Source of the DNA: Macrostomum lignano
Lineage: Eukaryota
Length of the DNA stretch: 64,000 bases
Direction: 5' to 3'
Assembly (NCBI GenBank): GCA_002269645.1
Contig: NIVC01000373.1
Location: forward strand, 73,641 to 137,640
Shown: positions 35,608-44,327 of the stretch, one piece after another
Position numbering within the stretch: the first letter of the stretch is position 1
How the letters are laid out: every line of letters begins with the position of its first letter
Made by a program: the position numbers and the translations under genes
The notes under the pieces: generated by a model
What the model saw: only the letters and a program-made list of their open reading frames with translations
What the model was told of the DNA's origin: nothing
Databases searched by the model: none

Positions 35608-36092
35608 TATATCGGCGCCATGGTGTGGAAGGCGGACATGAAGGACACCAGCAGCGGCAGGCTGCACACCCGCCAGTGGAAGCGGCCAACTGGCCACCCT
35701 GGCTGAGAATCTTCTCCATCACTGACAGGCGAGCACTCAGCGAGGCTCTGGGTCACACGCGAGCTGCAGCCAGCGTTCAAATAAAAGCATCCCAGCTGCG
35801 CGCCACCCCGGGCACTGCCGCCATTGTGTGGAGCCGGTTCGCTCCAGTCAGCCTTTGATGCTCTCTGGCATTTTCCACTCGGAAAAAAAGCTGCTAGATA
35901 CTACTGCCGCCTGAGCAGCTGGAGCACCCCAGCCATTTTCCACTCTGTTCACCGGTTTTCCACTGGCAATTGAAGCCACTACAAATCCACGATGGACTTT
36001 GAGTTTATCGCCAGCGCATGCGGGACCTTCAACTCGATAAACTGGTACTTGAATTCTGCTTTGTTGGTTGAAATCATCGGGGAAACCCCGTG

Positions 36093-36650
36093 CCAGTCAG
36101 GGGAATCCCCGGTGGCCAGCGACAGGGATTGCCAGTCAGGGGAGCCCCGGTGGCCAGCGACAGGGATTGCCAGTAGGGGAATCCCTGGTGGCCAGCGACA
36201 GGGATTGCCAGTCAGGGGAGCCCCGGTGGCCAGCGACAGGGATTGCCAGTAGGGGAATCCCCGGTGGCCAGCGACAGGGATTGCCAGTCAGGGGAGCCCC
36301 GGTGGCCAGCGACAGGGATTGCCAGTCAGGGGAATCCCCGGTGGTCAGCGACAGGGATTGCCAGTCAGGGGAATCCCCGGTGGCCAGCGACAGGGATTGC
36401 AGTCAGGGGAGCCCCTGTGGCCAGCGACAGGGATTGCCGGTCAGGGGAGCCCCGGTGGCCAGCGACAGGGATTGCCAGTCAGGGGATTCCCCGGTGGCCA
36501 GCGGCAGGGATTGCCAGTCAGGGGAATCCTCGGTGACCAGCGGCAGGGAGTTCCAGTCAGGGGAATCCCCGGTGGCCAGCGGCAGGGAGTTCCAGTCAGG
36601 GGAATCCCCGGTGGCCAGCGGCAGGGATTGCCAGTCGGGAATCCCCGGTG
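36093..36650. repeat. 38-39-bp minisatellite GGGGAATCCCCGGTGGCCAGCGACAGGGATTGCCAGTCA
   Basis: About 14 units. Confidence 0.95.
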
Positions 36651-37028
36651 CCACTGCTGGCCTGCAGCAGGTACATGTAAAGACTCAAAACAAAAACTCT
36701 TTTATTTTGAATTTTCAATAAAAAAGCCGCAGAACTTCGCAGCCCGCAGAGGCCGCTCTCTGATGTATTTAAGTAGCAAATGCAACACAAACGCGAATGC
36801 ACAACAGCAAAATGGCATACATTTAGGAATTCCGCCGACAGTCAAATAGAACTCATTCACGTAGAAGCAGGCAGGTCAAAGCTTTTAAATAATTGAAGAT
36901 AAGCGAGATGCGCATCACCTTTGCTATGGAATAAGGGGAATCAAATGATGAGAATGGGGAACACCATTTGCTATGAAACAGGACATTTTACTGTTAGGGA
37001 ACAGGGGAATCCGCTTTTATAAAACATG

Positions 37029-37232
37029 GGAAATCCCGCTGCTATGGCACGTGGGAAATCCCATTGCTATGGAACGTCGGAAATCCCGTTGCTATGGAAC
37101 GTGGGAATCTTCCGTTGCTATGGAACGTGGGAAATCCCGTTGCTATGGAACGTGGGAATCTCCCGTTGCTACGGAACGTGGGAAATCCTGTCGCTATAGA
37201 ACGTGGGAAATCCCGTCGTTATGGAACAGGGG
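37029..37232. repeat. ~25-bp minisatellite GGAACGTGGGAAATCCCGTTGCTAT
   Basis: About 8 degenerate units 3' of MED27. Confidence 0.9.
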
Positions 37233-37289
37233 AATCCCCTTAGACCAGACAAAATGTACACTTTAAAATGCAGGCCAGAAGCGCTGGAA

Positions 37290-38552
37290 TCAGGCGGCGC
37301 ACACGGCACTCTTGCAGGCCAGGTGATAGACTGGCCGGTCGTCCTTGCGAAAATCGAACCAGGTGGGCGGCAGCTGGTCCCGCAGGATGCGGTCGCAGCG
37401 GGCGCAGCGCTGCATGAAGAGGTTGCGAAAGGCGCAGAGCCACTTGATGAGCAGCTGCAGCAGGCTGGTGCCGCCGCCGCTCTGCCTGCCGGCCACCAGC
37501 AGCTGCAGCAGGCCGGCCGTCAGCTGGCGGAAACAGCGAAAATGGGAGCTCGGCCAGGCCTGGTTGGGCCGGGGCAGCGGCTCGCCGAGGCCCAGCACCT
37601 GCGGGCAGGGGAGAACCCGAAATGCACATGTATATTGCAGGTATACAGCTGAGCACGAATACGGAGCCAGGGGGGGGGATGGATGGGAAAACTCAAGAGG
37701 GGATCAAAGTCTCACCTGAGCCAGGGGGAGCGGGATGAATGGGAAAACTCAACAGGGGATCAAAGCCTCACCTGAGCCAGGGGGAGCGGGATGAATGGGA
37801 AAACTCAACAGGGGATCAAAGCCTCACCTGAGCCAGGGGGAGCGGGATGGATGGGAAAACTCAACAGGGGATCAAAGCCTCACCTGAGCCATCTCAATAA
37901 CCAGGCCCCTTGTGAACAGCAGCACGTGGAAGCAGTCGGTGGTGACGACGGCCAGATTGGTGCAGGGCGACGCGGGCTCTACGGAGACGCTGAGCTGGCG
38001 GTCCGAGTCGCGGTGGTGCCGTTCGCACTGGGTCCGGTAGCTGCGGCTCAGCTCCCGCTCCAGGAAGTTCCGCATCTGCTGCGACTGCGTGGCCAATTCA
38101 CTCTGGCGCCCTCCACCCGACCGGGAGGCGGCGGCGGAGGCGGTGGCAGCGGCGGCGGCCGGGGCGCGGGCGCGGGCGTGCAGGAGGGCGCGGGTGGCCA
38201 GGCCGTCGCGCACCAGGCCGCAGACGTCGGCGCGCCAGCGTTCGCCGAACAACGCCTGGGTTGTGGCGGCGTGCCGCTCCGGGTCGGCGTCAGCCAGCAG
38301 GATGTTGGGGTACAAACTGAGCTGGTCGGGCGGGACCGCCTGCTGGTACTGCTGCCTGGCAACCAGCGCCATCTTCTCGGCCAGCTGGTCCAGGCTCTGC
38401 ACGCTCTCGGCCAGCTTGCGGGCGGTGGCGGCCAGCTGCTCGAAGCCGGACGACCCGGAACCGTCGCTGGCCGGCTGGTGCAGCTGCAGCAGCTCGCCGC
38501 GAAGCTCGCGCACGTGCAGCAGGCTCTGGATGGACAGGTGGCTCAGGCTCTC
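37290..38552 (-). CDS. MED27: Mediator subunit 27; exons 38552..37884, 37598..37290; no genomic ATG identified
   Basis: C-terminal WLCAFRNLF..RCARCDRILRDQLPPTWFDFR..YHLAC zinc site and FHVLLFTRGLVIE region resemble MED27. The frame opens at acceptor CCCGCAG|GAG AGC CTG. Confidence 0.82.
37665..37890. repeat. 56-bp minisatellite in the MED27 intron; each unit contains GCTCAG|GTGAG on the minus strand
   Basis: CTCACCTGAGCC at 37711, 37767, 37823, 37879. Confidence 0.93.
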
Positions 38553-38631
38553 CTGCGGGATGGCGCACAGATTGCCACACAGTGGGGTTCTGATGCTAAT
38601 GCTTGGGACTAAGAATGTGCTACATGGGATT

Positions 38632-39205
38632 CAAGATACTGCTGAGATCCCAGGTGAGTGAGACAGGTATCCTACAGGATGAAGCTGTGAGATACTGCTG
38701 AGATCCCAGGTAAGTGGGATAGGTATCCCACAGGATGAAGATGTGAGATACTGCTAAGATCCCAGGTAAGTGGGATAGGTATCCTACAGAATGAAGCTGT
38801 GAGATACTGCTGAGATCCCAGGTGGGTGGGACAGGTATCCTACAGAATGAAGCTGTGAGATACTGCTGAGATCCCAGGTGGGTGGGACAGGTATCCTACA
38901 TGATGAAGCTGTGAGATACTGCTGAGATCCCAAGTGGGTGGGACAGGTATCCTACAGAATGAAGCTGTGAGATACTGCTGAGATCCCAGGTGGGTGGGAC
39001 AGGTATCCTACATGATAAAGATGTGAGATACTGCTGAGATCCCAGGTGAGTGGGACAGGTATCCTACAGGATGAAGATGTGAGATACTGCTGAGATCCCA
39101 GGTGAGTGGGACAGGTATCCTACAGGATGAAGATGAGATACTGCTGAGATCCCAGGTGAGTGGGACAGGTATCCTACAGGATGATGTGAGATACTGCTGA
39201 GATCC
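38632..39205. repeat. 56-bp minisatellite between TBL3 and MED27
   Basis: GAGATACTGCTGAGATCCCAGGTGAGTGGGACAGGTATCCTACAGGATGAAGATGT, about 10 units. Confidence 0.95.
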
Positions 39206-39338
39206 CGGTAGGATCCGGAACAGCGGAGGCCTGAGCCAGACTAAGAGCCCTAAGCTATCTGCAGAACAAACAAAAGACTTGGCCAAAATTGGACCAGAAT
39301 TCGCGCCCGAATGAATTCAAATCGGGTCAAAAATGCAG

Positions 39339-39344
39339 TTTATT
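39339..39344 (-). promoter_or_regulatory. Candidate poly(A) signal AATAAA for TBL3
   Basis: TTTATT on the plus strand, about 57 nt downstream of the TBL3 stop. Confidence 0.5.
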
Positions 39345-39400
39345 TCATTCGCAGGGTCGCAACTCATGATAAAAGCAAGCAGGCACAGGTAGTGGCATTC

Positions 39401-42400
39401 TCAGGCAGCGGGGTCAGCAGCCAGCAGGCGGATCAGGTGCCGACACGCTGCCAGCTGCTGCGCCCGCCTTTCGTGCCGCTCGGTGAAAGCGAGGAGGGCG
39501 GGCAGGTGGCGCCGCACGGAGGGCCAGGCCAGCAGCTGCTGCGGCGTCCGCACTAGCAGGAGGGCGTGCAGGGCGCACTGCGCCTCGTGGCAGGTGCGCG
39601 AGTTCGAATTCCAGCCGGCGCTGAACTCCAGCAGGCGCTGCTGCAGCGGCTCGTCCAGGCCGCGCACGAGCTCCGGGTCCAGGCGGCCGCAGCCGGAGGC
39701 CGCCACCAAGTCGGCCACGATGCCGCGCGCCCGCGATGGCTGGGCAAGGCTCAGCGCCAGGGCGAGGGCCTCGGCGAGGCGGCCGGAACCAAGCAGATTC
39801 TGAAGGCGCTGCTCGCGCGCCAAAGCGTCAGCGCGGGCTTCAGCGCGCTCGGCAACGGCCTCGGCGGTGGCATCTCGCCAAAGCAGCAGCCGGCCGTCCT
39901 CGCCGCCGGTGAGCCAGTGACCGCCAGAGCCGCTGGTGCCTTCGTCGGTGGCGTCAGCGGCCGGGGCGGCGTCTCCTAGCGAGGCGATGCACCAGGCGCG
40001 GCCGTTGTGGCCCTCCCGGGTGGCCACCGGGGCGCGGTCCCGCACCGACCAGACGCGAACAAGGCCGGACTGCGGGGCGGGGTGGGAGTGGCCGAGGTGA
40101 CAGGGGCGGAGGTGACGGGCGGAGGCGGATGCAGAGGTGGTGACAGGGGCGGAGGCGGATGCAGAGGTGGTGACAGGGGCGGAGGTGGATGCAGAGGTGG
40201 TGACAGGGGCGGAGGCGGATGCAGAGGAGGTGACAGGGGCGGAGGTGGATGCAGAGGTGGTGACAGGGGCGGAGGCGGATGCAGAGGTGGTGACAGGGGC
40301 GGAGGTGGATGCAGAGGTGGTGACAGGGGCGGAGGTGGATGCAGAGGTGGTGACAGGGGCGGAGGCGGATGCAGAGGAGGTGACAGGGGCGGAGGTGGAT
40401 GCAGAGGTGGTGACAGGGGCGGAGGCGGATGCAGAGGTGGTGACAGGGGCGGAGGTGGATGCAGAGGTGGTGACAGGGGCGGAGGTGGATGCAGAGGTGG
40501 TGACAGGGGCGGAGGCGGATGCAGAGGAGGTGACAGGGGCGGAGGCGGATGCAGAGGAGGTGACAGGGGCGGAGGCGGATGCAGAGGTGACAGGGGCGGA
40601 GGTGGATGCAGAGGTGGTGACAGGGGCGGAGGTGGATGCAGAGGTGGTGAAAGGAGCGGAGGTGGCAGGGACGGAGGCGGATGCAGGCGGGTGGCAGGGC
40701 GAATATTCAAACACAGGCAGGCTTGGCGACAAGCTGCACCCAAACTCGCACCTGATCCACTGTGACAAGGTGCTGTGAGCCCAGCCAGTCGAGGTCGTAC
40801 AGCGGGTGGTCACCCTGCAGGCAGCGGTGGCAGCTGAGGTCGCGCAAGTCCCAAACTCTGGCACAGCAGTCGGCGGAGACGCTGGCCAGCAGCTGCTGGT
40901 GCCGGCTGAATTTGACGCTCCAGACGCCCCGCTTGTGGCCGGAGAGCCGCCCGATGGGACGCAGCTTGGGCAGCGACCAGAGCGACACGGACTTGTCCCG
41001 GCTGCCTGCGGCCAGCAGGGTGTCGTTAGGCGACACCGCCAGGCAGTTGACGGCCTTCTCGTGCGGCCTGGTCACCATGGCAACCACGGTCGGCCCGGAG
41101 TCGGTGACGCGGAAGGCTTTGATAACGGGCGTCTCGCAGGCGGAGGCGGCCATATTGCCGTCGGCAGTAGCGGCCAGGGCGGTCACGTGACCCTCGTGGC
41201 CGGGCTCCAGGTCGCCAATGTGGACGGCGCGCACGCCGGCGAGGCTCTGGCCGGCGACCTCGAGGCGGTGAAGGCGGACCCGGCCGCCCTTGGCAGCGGT
41301 GAGAAGGCGGTTGCCGGGCAGCAGCGAGCAGCAGATCAGCGAGTCCAGCTCGCCGTGCAGCTGCAGGGAACGGCAGCGCCAATCAGCGGAGTCGCCCGGC
41401 CGCCACAGGAAGACGCGAAGGAAGGGGCCGGAGTCCGTGGCCAGCAGCAGCCGGGTAGCCGAGGCATCGCCAATTGGCGGGCCCGCCAGCACGCAGGTGA
41501 CCTCGCCGAGGGCGCCGCACCACTCGGCCTCGAGGCGGCCGCTGCCACTGTACAGCTCGACGGAGCCCGCCTGCCTGGCGACCAGCAGGCCGTCGCCCAG
41601 CGTTAGGGCGCACTGCACGCTGCCGGGGGAGTACTCCGCGCTCTCCCCGCCGCCTCCGCCGCCGCCGCTCTGGCCGCCGTCGCCGCGGCTGAGCTCCAGC
41701 AGGCAGCGGCGCCGGCTGCTGCTGAGGTCCCAGAACTTGAGCCGGCCGGACTGGCCGCCAGTCAGCACCAGCCCGCCGGCGACGGCTCCGAGTCCCAGCG
41801 ACTCCGCCAGGCCTGCCGGGGCGCGGATGCAGCACTCCAGACTCTCGTCGGTGGGTACCGTTGCTAGGCGAGAATAATTGCTCAGCTGCCAGACAATTAG
41901 CACCTAAAATGCGAGAAATAGCGACCTTGGACTTAAATTTAGCATACTACTCTTATCTAATAGGTGTAGAATCCTATCCCTGACACCCTAAAACTGATCC
42001 CTGACACCCTAAAACTGATCCCTGACACCCTAACACCTGATCCCTGACACCCTAACACCTGATCCCTGACACCCTAACACCTGATCCCTGACACCCTGAC
42101 ACCTGATCCCTGACACCCTAACAACTGATCCCTGATACCCTGACACCTGATCCCTGACACCCTAACACCTGATCCCTGACACCCTAACACCTGATCCCTG
42201 ACACCCTAACACCTGATCCCTGACACCCTAACACCTGATCCCTGACATCCTAACACCTGATCCCTGACACCCTAACACCTGATCCCTGACACCCTAACAC
42301 CTGATCCCTGACATCCTAACACCTGATCCCTGACACCCTGACACTTGATCCCTGACACCCTAACACCTGATCCCTGACACCCTAACACCTGATCCCTGAC

Positions 42401-43081
42401 ATCCTGAAATCCGATCCCGGACACCAAAACCGGCCTCACCTGATCCCTGCCGCTGGTGACGGCCCAGCCCTCGTCCATCAGGCACAGGCCGGTGACGGCG
42501 CTCTGGTGGCCTTCCAGCGCTCCACTCAGCTCGGCAGAGGTGGCGGACCAAACGCGCACCCGATAGTCATGCCCGTCAGCTGAGAACAGTTGGCCCGCAG
42601 CGAGGCGCAGGAGGCTGAGCAGGCCGGAGTGCCCCCTGCAGGGCCGGGTGTCGCCGTTTCCCCGATCCCACAGCCGCACGGCGCCGTCCGAGCTGCCACT
42701 GGCCAGCCGTCGACCGTCCTCGCTGACGGCCAGCAGGGTGATGGGGCTGCGGTGGAAGCTGCGCCAGGTGCTGCCTGTCTCGCCAGTCTGCCAGTCCCAG
42801 CGGCGCAGCAGCAGCTCCTTGTTGGCCGTGTAGACGGCCGAGTCCGCCGGCGACACCGCGACTGCCGTGACCTTCTCCGTCTGGCCGACGAGCTCCCGAT
42901 GGATGCCGCAGTCTGTGGTGTCCACCACGAACAGCGAGGAGCCGTCCGAGGTGTTGCGCTGGCAGATGACGTGGCGCCCGTCGTGTCCAGCGTGAATCGC
43001 CGACCCCGGCGAGTGGAACGGGCGCAGCTCGGACACCTGACGGAGCTCCACCTCGTCGGGCGGCGAAGATGCTGAAGTCAT
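39401..43081 (-). CDS. TBL3: Transducin beta-like 3 / UTP13 WD40 protein; exons 43081..42440, 41903..40752, 40069..39401 (820 aa)
   Basis: Multiple WD repeats (LASGSSDGAVRLWD, HEKAVNCLAVSPND..SRDKSVSLW, GHKRGVWSVKFS) and a Utp13 C-terminal domain (EQRLQNLL..WNSNSRTCHEAQ..LLAFTERH); exons sum to 2463 nt. Confidence 0.92.
40090..40685. repeat. 30-bp minisatellite GAGGTGGTGACAGGGGCGGAGGCGGATGCA in TBL3 intron 2
   Basis: About 19 units. Confidence 0.96.
41985..42420. repeat. 22-bp minisatellite CTAACACCTGATCCCTGACACC in TBL3 intron 1
   Basis: About 19 units; the minus strand repeats CAGGGATCAG|GTG, the exon 1 donor junction. Confidence 0.95.
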
Positions 43082-43172
43082 GCCGGGCTGATGCTGCATA
43101 AAATAGAAAGCCGGCTGCGTATTGTGGCCGCTCCTCTGCCTGCTCAAAGTGTGAAAATCAGCTGTTGATACT

Positions 43173-43723
43173 GGCTCATAGAGTGGCAATCGGCTACTCC
43201 TACCTGCTCATAGAGTGGCAATCGGCTACTCCTACCTGCTCATAGAGTGGCAATCGGCTACTCCTACCTGCTCATAGAGTGGTAATCGGCTACTCCTACC
43301 TGCTCATAGAGTGGCAATCGGCTACTCCTACCTGCTCATAGAGTGGCAATCGGCTACTCCTACCTGCTCATAGAGTGGCAATCGGCTACTCCTACCTGCT
43401 CATAGAGTGGCAATCGGCTACTCCTACCTGCTCATGGAGTGGCAATCGGCTACTTCTACCTGCTCATAGAGTGACAATCGGCTACTCCTACCTGCTCATA
43501 GAGTGACAATCAGCTACTCCTACCTGCTCATGGAGTGACAATAGGCTACTCCTACCTGCTCATAGAGTGACAATCGGCTACTCCTACCTGCTCATAGAGT
43601 GACAATCAGCTACTCCTACCTGCTCATAGAGTGAAAATCGGCTACTCCTACCTGCTCATAGAGTGACAATCAGCTACTCCTACCTGCTCATAGTGACAAT
43701 AGGCTACTCCTACCTGCTCATAG
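43173..43723. repeat. 32-bp minisatellite CTCATAGAGTGGCAATCGGCTACTCCTACCTG between CDK5 and TBL3
   Basis: About 17 units. Confidence 0.96.
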
Positions 43724-44327
43724 AATGACACAAGGACGCGAACGGTGAATAAGTGTGTGGGCCAGCGGTGCCACCCAGTAGGCATATATGGAAATCGCAT
43801 ATATTTTATATTTAGTAATTCGCAGCATCACGAATCGGTGACCAGCCAAGCTCTGAGAGCGGATCACAGAGTACGCGGGAGGGGGGAGGGCAGGCCGGGC
43901 AAATCGGGCATTCGGATTATGCAATCATTTTGAGAACCTCAGCTGACCTGGCGAGTTGATCCGACAAGGCCAGACAGAGGCAGTGGAACATACCAGAATT
44001 AGTAGCACAACACACGACACCGAATGACTAGAAGCGGTAATTGCAGCAGCAATAGCGCAGTACACTAGCAGCTAAGCCTAGGAGTCAACAGGCTAAACAG
44101 GCATGGCAAAATTCCGTGCAAATCAAAGAAAGGATCTGAAAACAAAGAGCGCATCAATAACCGCGATTTCTCAATTAAAAACAGAATTGCACATTTGTTC
44201 TATACACTCTACTCATAGTAGGCTGAATCAGACAGTAGCAAACTTGCACAATTCGCGATGACTGGAGCATCAATAATGAGCTGGACGGGCCGCGCCAGCA
44301 GAGCCAGGGGGAGCAGAGACCGGAGGC

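What the first reader, a model, noticed from the sequence alone, without database searches (positions are those of the whole stretch)
38400..39400. MED27 has no visible genomic start codon: candidate for a spliced-leader-donated AUG
Seen: the frame begins exactly at a pyrimidine-rich acceptor in phase 0 (CGCCATCCCGCAG|GAG AGC CTG AGC CAC). In the 848 bp up to the TBL3 stop, the ATGs I found are followed at once or soon by stops (ATG TAG, ATG AAA TAA), and I saw no ATG exon with a phase-0 donor. The first in-frame Met is ~55 codons in. Established: flatworm spliced leaders end in AUG, and in Schistosoma this AUG can act as initiator Met. Inference: trans-splicing at 38552 gives MESLSHLSIQSLLHVRELR.., making the gene obligately dependent on the SL for translation.
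Basis: partly seen in the sequence, partly recalled or inferred. Interest (0 to 1): 0.72.

Follow-up and report, generated by a model that had tools for sequence, protein, structure and literature searches.

The report
MED27 start codon supplied by spliced leader
In the flatworm Macrostomum lignano the MED27 gene has no start codon of its own at its 5' end and almost certainly borrows the AUG at the end of the trans-spliced leader, a mechanism already well documented in flatworms, so this is a clean example and not a new phenomenon.

Summary
On the minus strand, a MED27 reading frame opens in phase 0 directly after the acceptor ...CGCCATCCCGCAG| at 38552. An in-frame stop lies 27 codons upstream with no ATG between. 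The first genomic in-frame ATG is codon 61 (38372-38370).

The window is identical to Macrostomum lignano scaffold NIVC01000373.1. The M. lignano 35-nt spliced leader ends in ATG. The GenBank annotation, whose transcript ends were cut at sites where SL-bearing reads map, gives MED27 as a 325-aa "partial" protein starting exactly at ESLSH.

TBL3 and MED27 fit the published operon criterion. They lie on the same strand with an 848-nt gap, 275 nt after removing a tandem repeat.

The first 60 codons look coding (GC3 0.97). They align to the conserved N-terminal helices of MED27 orthologues, none of which start at the downstream Met.

"Obligate" applies to the full-length protein only. Codon-61 AUG has a stronger Kozak context and could yield a truncated product.

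SL-AUG initiation is established in flatworms (Cheng et al. 2006), so this is a new member of a known kind and of low to moderate interest.

The parts
38553..38571 (-). 3' splice (trans-splice) acceptor: pyrimidine-rich tract CTGTGCGCCATCCCGCAG, with the AG at 38554-38553
   Evidence: The 120 nt upstream of the junction, acceptor included, are identical in two genomic copies (L001, L002). The third copy (L003) keeps the acceptor and shows two substitutions further upstream. CCGCAG matches the CAG core of the published [T/C]TNCAG trans-acceptor motif but has C in place of T at -5.
37884..38552 (-). MED27 exon 1 (669 nt, phase 0 at both ends). It begins GAG AGC CTG (ESLSH...) and ends CAG|GTGAGG.
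   Evidence: GenBank PAA82563.1/PAA84467.1 (325 aa, 'partial') starts exactly here. GC3 of the first 60 codons is 0.967.
38370..38372 (-). First genomic AUG of the mRNA (codon 61, in frame, context GAGAAGAUGG). Possible leaky-scanning start for an N-terminally truncated product.
   Evidence: the only ATGs in exon 1 are at 38372, 38075 and 37892, all in frame; the position falls inside predicted helix 38-70.
37599..37883 (-). Intron 1 of MED27. It contains a 56-bp x4 tandem repeat that reiterates the exon end plus the 5' splice site.
37290..37598 (-). MED27 exon 2 with the Med27 C-terminal Cys/His motif and stop codon TGA (37292-37290).
   Evidence: Invariant C288, C291, H315 and C318.
38634..39206 (.). 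56-bp x10 tandem repeat filling two thirds of the TBL3-MED27 intergenic/outron region.
   Evidence: Subtracting it leaves 275 nt, within the <1 kb repeat-adjusted operon criterion of PMC8629364.
39339..39344 (-). AATAAA, the likely poly(A) signal of TBL3, 57 nt after its stop.
   Evidence: sequence only; the poly(A) site itself was not verified.
39401..43093 (-). Upstream gene TBL3/Utp13 (824 aa). Its annotated CDS also begins at the first base after an acceptor (TTTTATGCAG|CAT CAG CCC GGC ATG).
39387..39398 (-). Formal alternative: ATG CCA CTA CCT followed by GTGCCT (phase-0 GT). Judged non-functional.
   Evidence: It starts 3 nt after the TBL3 stop, the donor is weak, and it is not used in the annotation.
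38584..38596 (-). Alternative acceptor GCATCAG|AACCCC (first exon base 38589), used by the chimeric TBL3-MED27 model A0A1I8FAL8. An SL-ATG joined here would be out of frame.

Best explanation
This is the Macrostomum lignano MED27 gene. It is the last gene of a same-strand, operon-like cluster: CDK5-like kinase, then TBL3, then MED27.

The proposed mechanism has three steps:
1. The pre-mRNA is processed by spliced-leader trans-splicing at the acceptor ending at 38553. This removes the repeat-rich outron and places the 35-nt SL in front of GAGAGC.
2. The SL ends in AUG and the acceptor is in phase 0, so the mature mRNA reads ...UUAUUGCAUG|GAG AGC CUG....
3. The SL AUG is 33 nt from the cap and is the first AUG on the mRNA. 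It starts translation of a 326-aa protein, M-ESLSHLSIQSLLHVRELR....

The genome itself encodes no initiator for the full-length protein.

Shown: the gene structure, the phase, the absence of a genomic AUG, the species, the SL sequence (literature), the annotated 5' end at this base, and the coding character and homology of the first 60 codons.

Inferred: that SL reads really map here, and that ribosomes start at the SL AUG.
For: - Species and SL: the window is identical to L002 from GCA_002269645.1. The SL sequence ending in ATG comes from PMC8629364. PMC10468722 calls the Macrostomum SL ATG the 'translation start codon'.
- Annotated 5' end: P0004 (PAA82563.1/PAA84467.1) is 325 aa, 'partial', and begins ESLSH. 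The annotation pipeline cut transcripts at SL-read peaks and then ran TransDecoder.
- Phase: of all AG sites from 38900 down to the start of the exon, only 38552 puts the SL ATG in the MED27 frame.
- Operon context: the gap is 848 nt, or 275 nt after subtracting the 573-nt repeat. The TBL3 CDS also starts right after an acceptor, whereas the kinase and the MFS gene have their own ATGs and do not start after AG.
- Coding signal before codon 61: GC3 0.967, GC1 0.75, GC2 0.417. The rest of the exon shows the same periodicity.
- Homology and structure: the conserved N-terminal helix aligns from residue ~7, and orthologue N-termini lie 0-11 residues before E1. A phmmer alignment to aphid MED27 spans query 11-318 against target 10-300. 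AlphaFold predicts helices 2-29 and 38-70, and the top Foldseek hits are human MED27 chains over ~300 columns.
- Precedent: SL-AUG initiation in Schistosoma and Echinococcus (Cheng et al. 2006, as cited in PMC9851317 and PMC3510090).
Against: - No SL-junction read, cDNA or peptide was available. The exact sequence M+P0004 is not in the 15-billion-protein collection, and no transcript-derived member exists in the cluster.
- The acceptor CCGCAG does not fully match the [T/C]TNCAG trans-acceptor motif. That motif covers only ~44% of sites.
- The SL AUG has U at -3 (weak context). Codon-61 AUG has A at -3 and G at +4.
- N-terminal homology on its own is weak. An HMM of orthologue N-termini ranks this ORF first of 1053, but at E = 0.23. 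pLDDT of the N-terminal helices is only 56-76.
- 'Partial' CDSs in this annotation are not always SL-related. The kinase (L007) and the MFS gene (L003) start 5'-open without an AG.
Confidence: 0.78

Rival explanations
1. Translation starts mainly at the first genomic AUG (codon 61, 38372-38370) and gives a 265-aa MED27. The 60 upstream codons would be 5' UTR, or the SL AUG would be bypassed by leaky scanning.
For: Codon-61 AUG is the first AUG in the genomic part of the mRNA and has a strong context (A-3, G+4). The SL AUG has U-3 (and the SL sequence). Older models of this locus start even further downstream (P0001 246 aa, P0005 166 aa).
Against: GC3 of 0.967 with clear three-base periodicity in the 60 upstream codons. 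Those codons align to the conserved N-terminal helix of all 16 orthologues, none of which starts at the equivalent of M61. M61 falls inside predicted helix 38-70. P0001 is a fragment and P0005 results from a 1-bp indel in the L003 copy.
Confidence: 0.1
2. A cis-spliced upstream exon provides the AUG. This could be the mini-exon ATG CCA CTA CCT|GT at 39398-39387, or an exon lying further upstream.
For: The formal candidate exists in phase 0. Orthologues carry up to 11 residues N-terminal to the position of E1, so a few more residues would be tolerable.
Against: The candidate begins 3 nt after the TBL3 stop, inside the presumed TBL3 3' UTR and upstream of its AATAAA, and has a weak donor (GTGCCT against GT[G/A]AG). 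The other five ATGs are followed by stops or lack a compatible donor. The annotated transcript/CDS starts at 38552.
Confidence: 0.05
3. MED27 is made as a TBL3-MED27 read-through fusion. A donor in the last TBL3 exon (...CTGGCAGC|GTGTCGG, about 39446) would be cis-spliced to the acceptor at 38589, as in UniProt A0A1I8FAL8.
For: Such a 533-aa model exists for the older ML2 assembly and keeps the frame. Polycistronic precursors are documented in M. lignano, and shared cis/trans acceptors are reported in parasitic flatworms.
Against: The model looks like a predictor's workaround for a missing ATG. It also carries frameshifted stretches in the MED27 part. The newer evidence-based annotation separates the two genes, with the TBL3 stop at 39401 and the MED27 start at 38552. 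A 12-residue linker TPLCGNLCAIPQ has no counterpart in orthologues.
Confidence: 0.03
4. The mRNA is not trans-spliced, and translation starts at a near-cognate codon in the 26 open codons upstream of the acceptor (for example the in-frame CTGs).
For: The frame is open for 26 codons upstream and contains in-frame CTG codons.
Against: GC content and GC3 drop upstream of the acceptor. The annotated 5' end is at the acceptor. No promoter or TSS evidence was found. Non-AUG starts are rare.
Confidence: 0.02

Closest known systems
SL-AUG-initiated mRNAs of flatworms (Cheng, Cohen, Ndegwa & Davis 2006, J Biol Chem 281:733; Schistosoma; also Echinococcus granulosus, PMC3510090)
   Same: An SL ending in AUG is joined in phase 0 to an ORF that lacks its own initiator. 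The N-terminus matches conserved orthologues only if the SL AUG is used. This is the same logic applied to the E. granulosus cDNAs and to the '>40 cDNAs' in S. mansoni.
   Different: The species is different: a free-living, early-branching macrostomid. Usage is inferred here from genome and annotation, not shown by cDNA or translation assays. The next AUG is unusually far downstream (60 codons), so the dependence is clear-cut.
M. lignano operons resolved by SL trans-splicing (Ustyantsev & Berezikov 2021, PMC8629364; Wudarski et al. 2017, PMC5730564)
   Same: Neighbours on the same strand, a first gene that is not trans-spliced, downstream genes that start at acceptors, and a repeat-inflated intergenic spacer that falls below 1 kb once repeats are removed.
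   Different: Those papers do not discuss the reading-frame relation of the SL ATG to the ORFs. This locus was not singled out.
slORFs in nematodes, Oikopleura and trypanosomes (slORFfinder, PMC9851317)
   Same: Start codons are contributed by the spliced leader.
   Different: Those cases mostly use near-cognate NUG codons inside the SL and often create alternative ORFs. Here a canonical terminal AUG starts the main conserved ORF.
Metazoan MED27 (human MED27 in PDB 7EMF/7LBM)
   Same: Two N-terminal helices followed by a C-terminal beta/alpha domain with a C-x2-C...H-x2-C motif. The profile matches human MED27 residues 10-311 at E 2e-121.
   Different: Low identity (15-23% to the 16 aligned orthologues; 18-19% in the Foldseek match to human MED27), an Ala-rich insert (residues ~127-150), and a genomic copy without a start codon.

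Membership tests
Flatworm mRNAs that use the SL 3'-terminal AUG as initiator | The organism has an SL RNA whose leader ends in AUG immediately before the GU donor | tested here: met
   The window is M. lignano. The SL CGGTCTCTTACTGCGAAGACTCAATTTATTGCATG followed by GTAAG is reported in PMC8629364. No SL gene lies in this window, so this rests on the literature.
Flatworm mRNAs that use the SL 3'-terminal AUG as initiator | The mRNA is SL trans-spliced at the acceptor in question | tested here: inconclusive
   Indirect but specific. The GenBank CDS (P0004, 'partial') starts at the first base after the AG, and the pipeline cut 5' ends at SL-read peaks. The operon context fits. No SL-junction read or cDNA could be inspected.
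Flatworm mRNAs that use the SL 3'-terminal AUG as initiator | [quoted passage not shown] | tested here: met
   Joining in silico gives MESLSH... through exon 1. 38552 is the only AG site upstream of or at the exon start that does so.
Flatworm mRNAs that use the SL 3'-terminal AUG as initiator | No genomic AUG can give an N-terminus corresponding to conserved orthologues | tested here: met
   No in-frame ATG lies between the upstream stop and codon 61. The orthologue alignment and the structure model place conserved helices in codons 2-70.
Flatworm mRNAs that use the SL 3'-terminal AUG as initiator | Ribosomes actually initiate at the SL AUG (protein N-terminus Met-Glu-Ser...) | not testable with these tools
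   Needs proteomics, Ribo-seq or a reporter assay.
MED27 (Pfam PF11571) | C-terminal Med27 domain with conserved Cys/His and overall MED27 architecture | tested here: met
   PF11571 at 50.7 bits against a cut-off of 25. Invariant C288, C291, H315 and C318. Profile hit to human MED27 at 2e-121. Foldseek top five hits are MED27 chains.
M. lignano SL-resolved operon (criterion of PMC8629364) | Adjacent same-strand genes, the downstream one trans-spliced, repeat-adjusted intergenic distance <1 kb | tested here: met
   TBL3 stop 39401 to MED27 start 38552 is 848 nt; subtracting the 573-nt repeat leaves 275 nt. Both genes are on the minus strand. The trans-splicing status carries the caveat given above.

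The most novel reading that the evidence does not exclude
Both downstream genes of this cluster (TBL3 and MED27) have their acceptors in phase 0 with the SL AUG. This could mean M. lignano holds a sizeable class of conserved housekeeping and neoblast-enriched genes that have lost, or never needed, a genomic initiator.

If so, synthesis of the full-length protein would be strictly gated by trans-splicing. For MED27, the weak context of the SL AUG would allow a regulated mix of full-length protein and a form lacking the N-terminal 60 residues, which could not join the Mediator tail normally.
Probability: 0.15. Interest if true: 0.5.

Novelty: new member of a known kind. Interest (0 to 1): 0.25.

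Why it matters
For annotators, genes like this are systematically mis-modelled. The same locus appears in databases in five forms:
- a 246-aa fragment;
- a 250-aa frameshifted model;
- a 166-aa truncation;
- a 533-aa TBL3-MED27 chimera;
- a 325-aa 'partial' protein.

Adding the SL Met gives the correct 326-aa protein.

For biology, the locus is an unusually clear case for testing SL-AUG initiation, because the next AUG is 60 codons away and lies inside a conserved helix. M. lignano is also the one flatworm with stable transgenesis, so the test is feasible there. It does not change what is known about the mechanism.

Tried and rejected
- Rfam scan of the window: no hits.
- SL sequence in the window at up to 3 mismatches: none, so there is no SL RNA gene here.
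- Homologue search with the N-terminal 126 aa alone: nothing, probably because the word index holds only cluster representatives.
- Exact look-up of M+ESLSH... (326 aa) and of the codon-61 version (265 aa), each in two allelic forms: none is in the collection, so no transcript-derived ORF is available.
- Comparison of the three genomic copies (L001-L003): too similar to be informative. There is one synonymous change in the first 384 nt of exon 1, two changes in the 120 nt upstream, and a 1-bp indel in L003.
- Supplement search for Mlig032149 and MED27 in PMC5816591: nothing.
- Cheng et al. 2006: not held in the library, so it is cited through papers that quote it.
- Logan cDNA contigs of two unnamed MED27 orthologues (L004, L005): ordinary 5' UTRs with their own ATG, organism unknown, uninformative about flatworms.
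- HMM of orthologue N-termini: best hit at the right place but E = 0.23, so it counts as supportive only.
- I considered and rejected that the ORF's openness alone proves coding, because several other frames are open in this GC-rich DNA. GC3 periodicity was used instead.

Full report
**What is there**

The finding concerns the minus strand. Read 5'->3' on that strand, the region 39403-37290 contains the following:
- The end of a TBL3/Utp13 gene, with stop TGA at 39403-39401.
- An AATAAA at 39344-39339.
- A 56-bp x10 tandem repeat at 39206-38634.
- About 80 nt of unique sequence ending in the pyrimidine-rich acceptor CTGTGCGCCATCCCGCAG (AG at 38554-38553).
- A GC-rich open frame beginning GAG AGC CTG AGC CAC at 38552.

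The frame runs 223 codons to CAG|GTGAGG, so exon 1 is 38552-37884. It resumes after a 285-nt intron at 37598 and stops at 37292-37290. The 325-aa product has a Pfam Med27 domain (PF11571, E 2.3e-13).

**Checking the observation**

- In frame, a stop lies 27 codons upstream of the acceptor, with no ATG between.
- The 848 nt back to the TBL3 stop contain six ATGs. Two open 16-17-codon ORFs.
It begins 3 nt after the TBL3 stop, lies upstream of the TBL3 poly(A) signal, and has a poor donor.
- The first genomic in-frame Met is codon 61 (38372-38370), not about 55.
- Six ATGs in 848 nt is within expectation.

**Which organism**

A protein search returned only Macrostomum lignano entries. The window is base-for-base identical to 13,263 nt of scaffold NIVC01000373.1 of assembly GCA_002269645.1. 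Two further near-identical copies exist (L001, L003), as expected for this partly duplicated genome.

According to the literature:
- M. lignano trans-splices about 30% of its genes to one 35-nt leader, CGGTCTCTTACTGCGAAGACTCAATTTATTGCATG (PMC8629364).
- About 15% of its genes lie in operons, defined there by a repeat-adjusted intergenic distance below 1 kb (PMC8629364).
- A later Macrostomum genome paper explicitly calls the terminal ATG of the leader the 'translation start codon' (PMC10468722).

**The strongest evidence: the deposited annotation**

An exact-sequence look-up showed that GenBank proteins PAA82563.1 and PAA84467.1 ('BOX15_Mlig032149g6, partial') are 325 aa and begin ESLSHLSIQ....

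That annotation was built by cutting transcriptional units at peaks of mapped SL-containing reads (TBONE) and then calling ORFs with TransDecoder (PMC5730564). A 5'-open ORF beginning at this exact codon means the transcript model begins at 38552-38554. If it began upstream, the ORF would have extended up to 26 more codons. This is indirect evidence, but it derives from experimental data.

'Partial' alone does not prove an SL site. The neighbouring kinase and an MFS gene have 5'-open CDSs that do not follow an AG.

**Context**

Annotated neighbours on the same strand are:
- A CDK5-like kinase (46644-44328), with its own ATG and no AG boundary.
- TBL3 (43093-39401), whose CDS starts right after TTTTATGCAG| as CAT CAG CCC GGC ATG.
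- MED27 (38552-37290).

The TBL3-MED27 gap is 848 nt, or 275 nt after removing the repeat. The kinase-TBL3 gap is 1,235 nt, including a 551-nt repeat. Both satisfy the operon criterion.

Joining the SL in silico to every AG from 38900 down to the start of the exon shows that only 38552 places the SL ATG in the MED27 frame. The acceptor at 38589, used by the chimeric UniProt model A0A1I8FAL8, would be out of frame.

**Are the 60 codons before the first genomic AUG really coding?**

- GC3 is 0.967, GC1 0.75 and GC2 0.417. The rest of the exon shows the same periodicity (0.896, 0.712, 0.528). GC falls to about 0.5 upstream of the acceptor.
- A full HMMER scan of 1.8 billion representatives found 43 MED27 relatives beyond the three M. 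lignano entries. The aphid protein aligns 10-300 to query 11-318.
- In a 17-sequence alignment, the conserved N-terminal helix (consensus L..L....LR..V..VF..L.DG) aligns to SIQSLLHVRELRGELLQLHQPASDG. Orthologue N-termini lie 0-11 residues before E1, and none starts at the equivalent of M61. Named members include Myzus, Lingula, Stegodyphus, tardigrades, Montipora and Mactra.
- An HMM built only from the orthologues' N-termini ranks this ORF first among 1,053 window ORFs in the correct register, but only at E = 0.23.
- AlphaFold2 predicts helices 2-29 and 38-70 (pLDDT 56-76), so a start at M61 would delete helix 1 and cut helix 2.
- The model's best PDB matches are human MED27 chains over about 300 columns. 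The profile matches human MED27 residues 10-311 at E 2e-121.

**Mechanism and its limits**

The best-supported reading is this. The polycistronic or outron-bearing precursor is trans-spliced at 38552. The SL provides the cap, a 32-nt 5' UTR and the AUG. Translation yields a 326-aa protein, MESLSH....

This is the mechanism described for Schistosoma by Cheng et al. (2006). That paper is cited here through PMC9851317 (SL AUG in frame in 28% of trans-spliced transcripts, more than 40 cDNAs requiring it) and PMC3510090 (Echinococcus).

'Obligately dependent' should be restricted to the full-length protein. The SL AUG has U at -3. Codon-61 AUG is the next AUG on the mRNA in any frame and has A-3/G+4, so some leaky scanning to a truncated product cannot be excluded (inference).

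**Novelty**

The phenomenon is established in flatworms and anticipated for Macrostomum. The specific gene is not discussed in the papers found here, and public databases carry five discordant models of it: 246 aa, 250 aa, 166 aa, a 533-aa TBL3-MED27 chimera, and a 325-aa 'partial'. I rate it a new member of a known kind. It is useful as a clean test case in a transgenesis-competent flatworm and as an annotation lesson, but it would not surprise a specialist.

**What could not be done**

No RNA-seq reads, cDNAs or peptides of M. lignano were reachable with the tools. Attempts through exact protein look-up, N-terminal homology search and paper supplements found nothing. Cheng et al. 2006 itself is not in the library.

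Noticed in passing
window 43093 (minus strand; = L002:1460): The annotated TBL3/Utp13 CDS (824 aa) also begins at the first base after an acceptor (ttctattttatgcag|CAT CAG CCC GGC ATG ACT). The SL ATG would be in frame there too (M-HQPG-MTSAS...), but a genomic ATG follows after four codons. So both downstream genes of the cluster have phase-0 acceptors.
   Followed up: partly
window 46644-37290, minus strand: CDK5-like kinase ([16 protein letters not shown]..., own ATG), TBL3 and MED27 form a same-strand cluster. Their repeat-adjusted spacers are under 1 kb, which fits the published M. lignano operon definition with a first gene that is not trans-spliced. The next annotated gene (an MFS transporter, start 27429) is about 10 kb away.
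   Followed up: partly
window 37664-37891: A 56-bp x4 tandem repeat straddles the exon 1/intron 1 boundary of MED27 and reiterates the exon end plus the 5' splice site (GGCTCAG|GTGAGGC). The intron therefore carries extra tandem copies of the donor. In the L001 copy the gene span is 338 nt longer (1,601 against 1,263 nt) although exon 1 is identical.
   Followed up: no
window 38634-39206: The intergenic 56-bp x10 repeat carries AG acceptors on the gene strand in almost every unit (CTCAG|CAG; CTGTAG| in most units) and CAG|GTGAGT-like donors on the opposite strand. An SL joined at these acceptors would give only short ORFs of 10-92 codons.
   Followed up: partly
P0002 (UniProt A0A1I8FAL8), P0003, P0001, P0005; L003:5525-6671: Public models of this gene disagree. 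There is a 533-aa TBL3-MED27 chimera joined by a predicted intron (about 39446 to 38589), a frameshifted 250-aa model named 'Chromosome 11 open reading frame 82', a 246-aa fragment, and a 166-aa model in the L003 copy. The L003 copy has a 1-bp indel near codon 129 of exon 1, which could be an assembly error or a decaying paralogue.
   Followed up: partly
window 36091-36650, 37023-37238, 40117-40665, 41976-42425, 43174-43724: Dense, highly regular tandem repeats (periods 39/76, 25, 30, 22 and 32 bp; 85-95% matches) occupy the region downstream of the MED27 stop, stretches inside the TBL3 gene span, and the kinase-TBL3 spacer. They are long enough to leave spurious open frames in several reading frames.
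   Followed up: no
L001, L002, L003 (GCA_002269645.1 scaffolds NIVC01000462.1, NIVC01000373.1, NIVC01000195.1): Three near-identical copies of the kinase-TBL3-MED27 locus are present in the assembly. In the L001 copy the TBL3 model is only 356 aa, against 824 aa in the other two copies.
   Followed up: no
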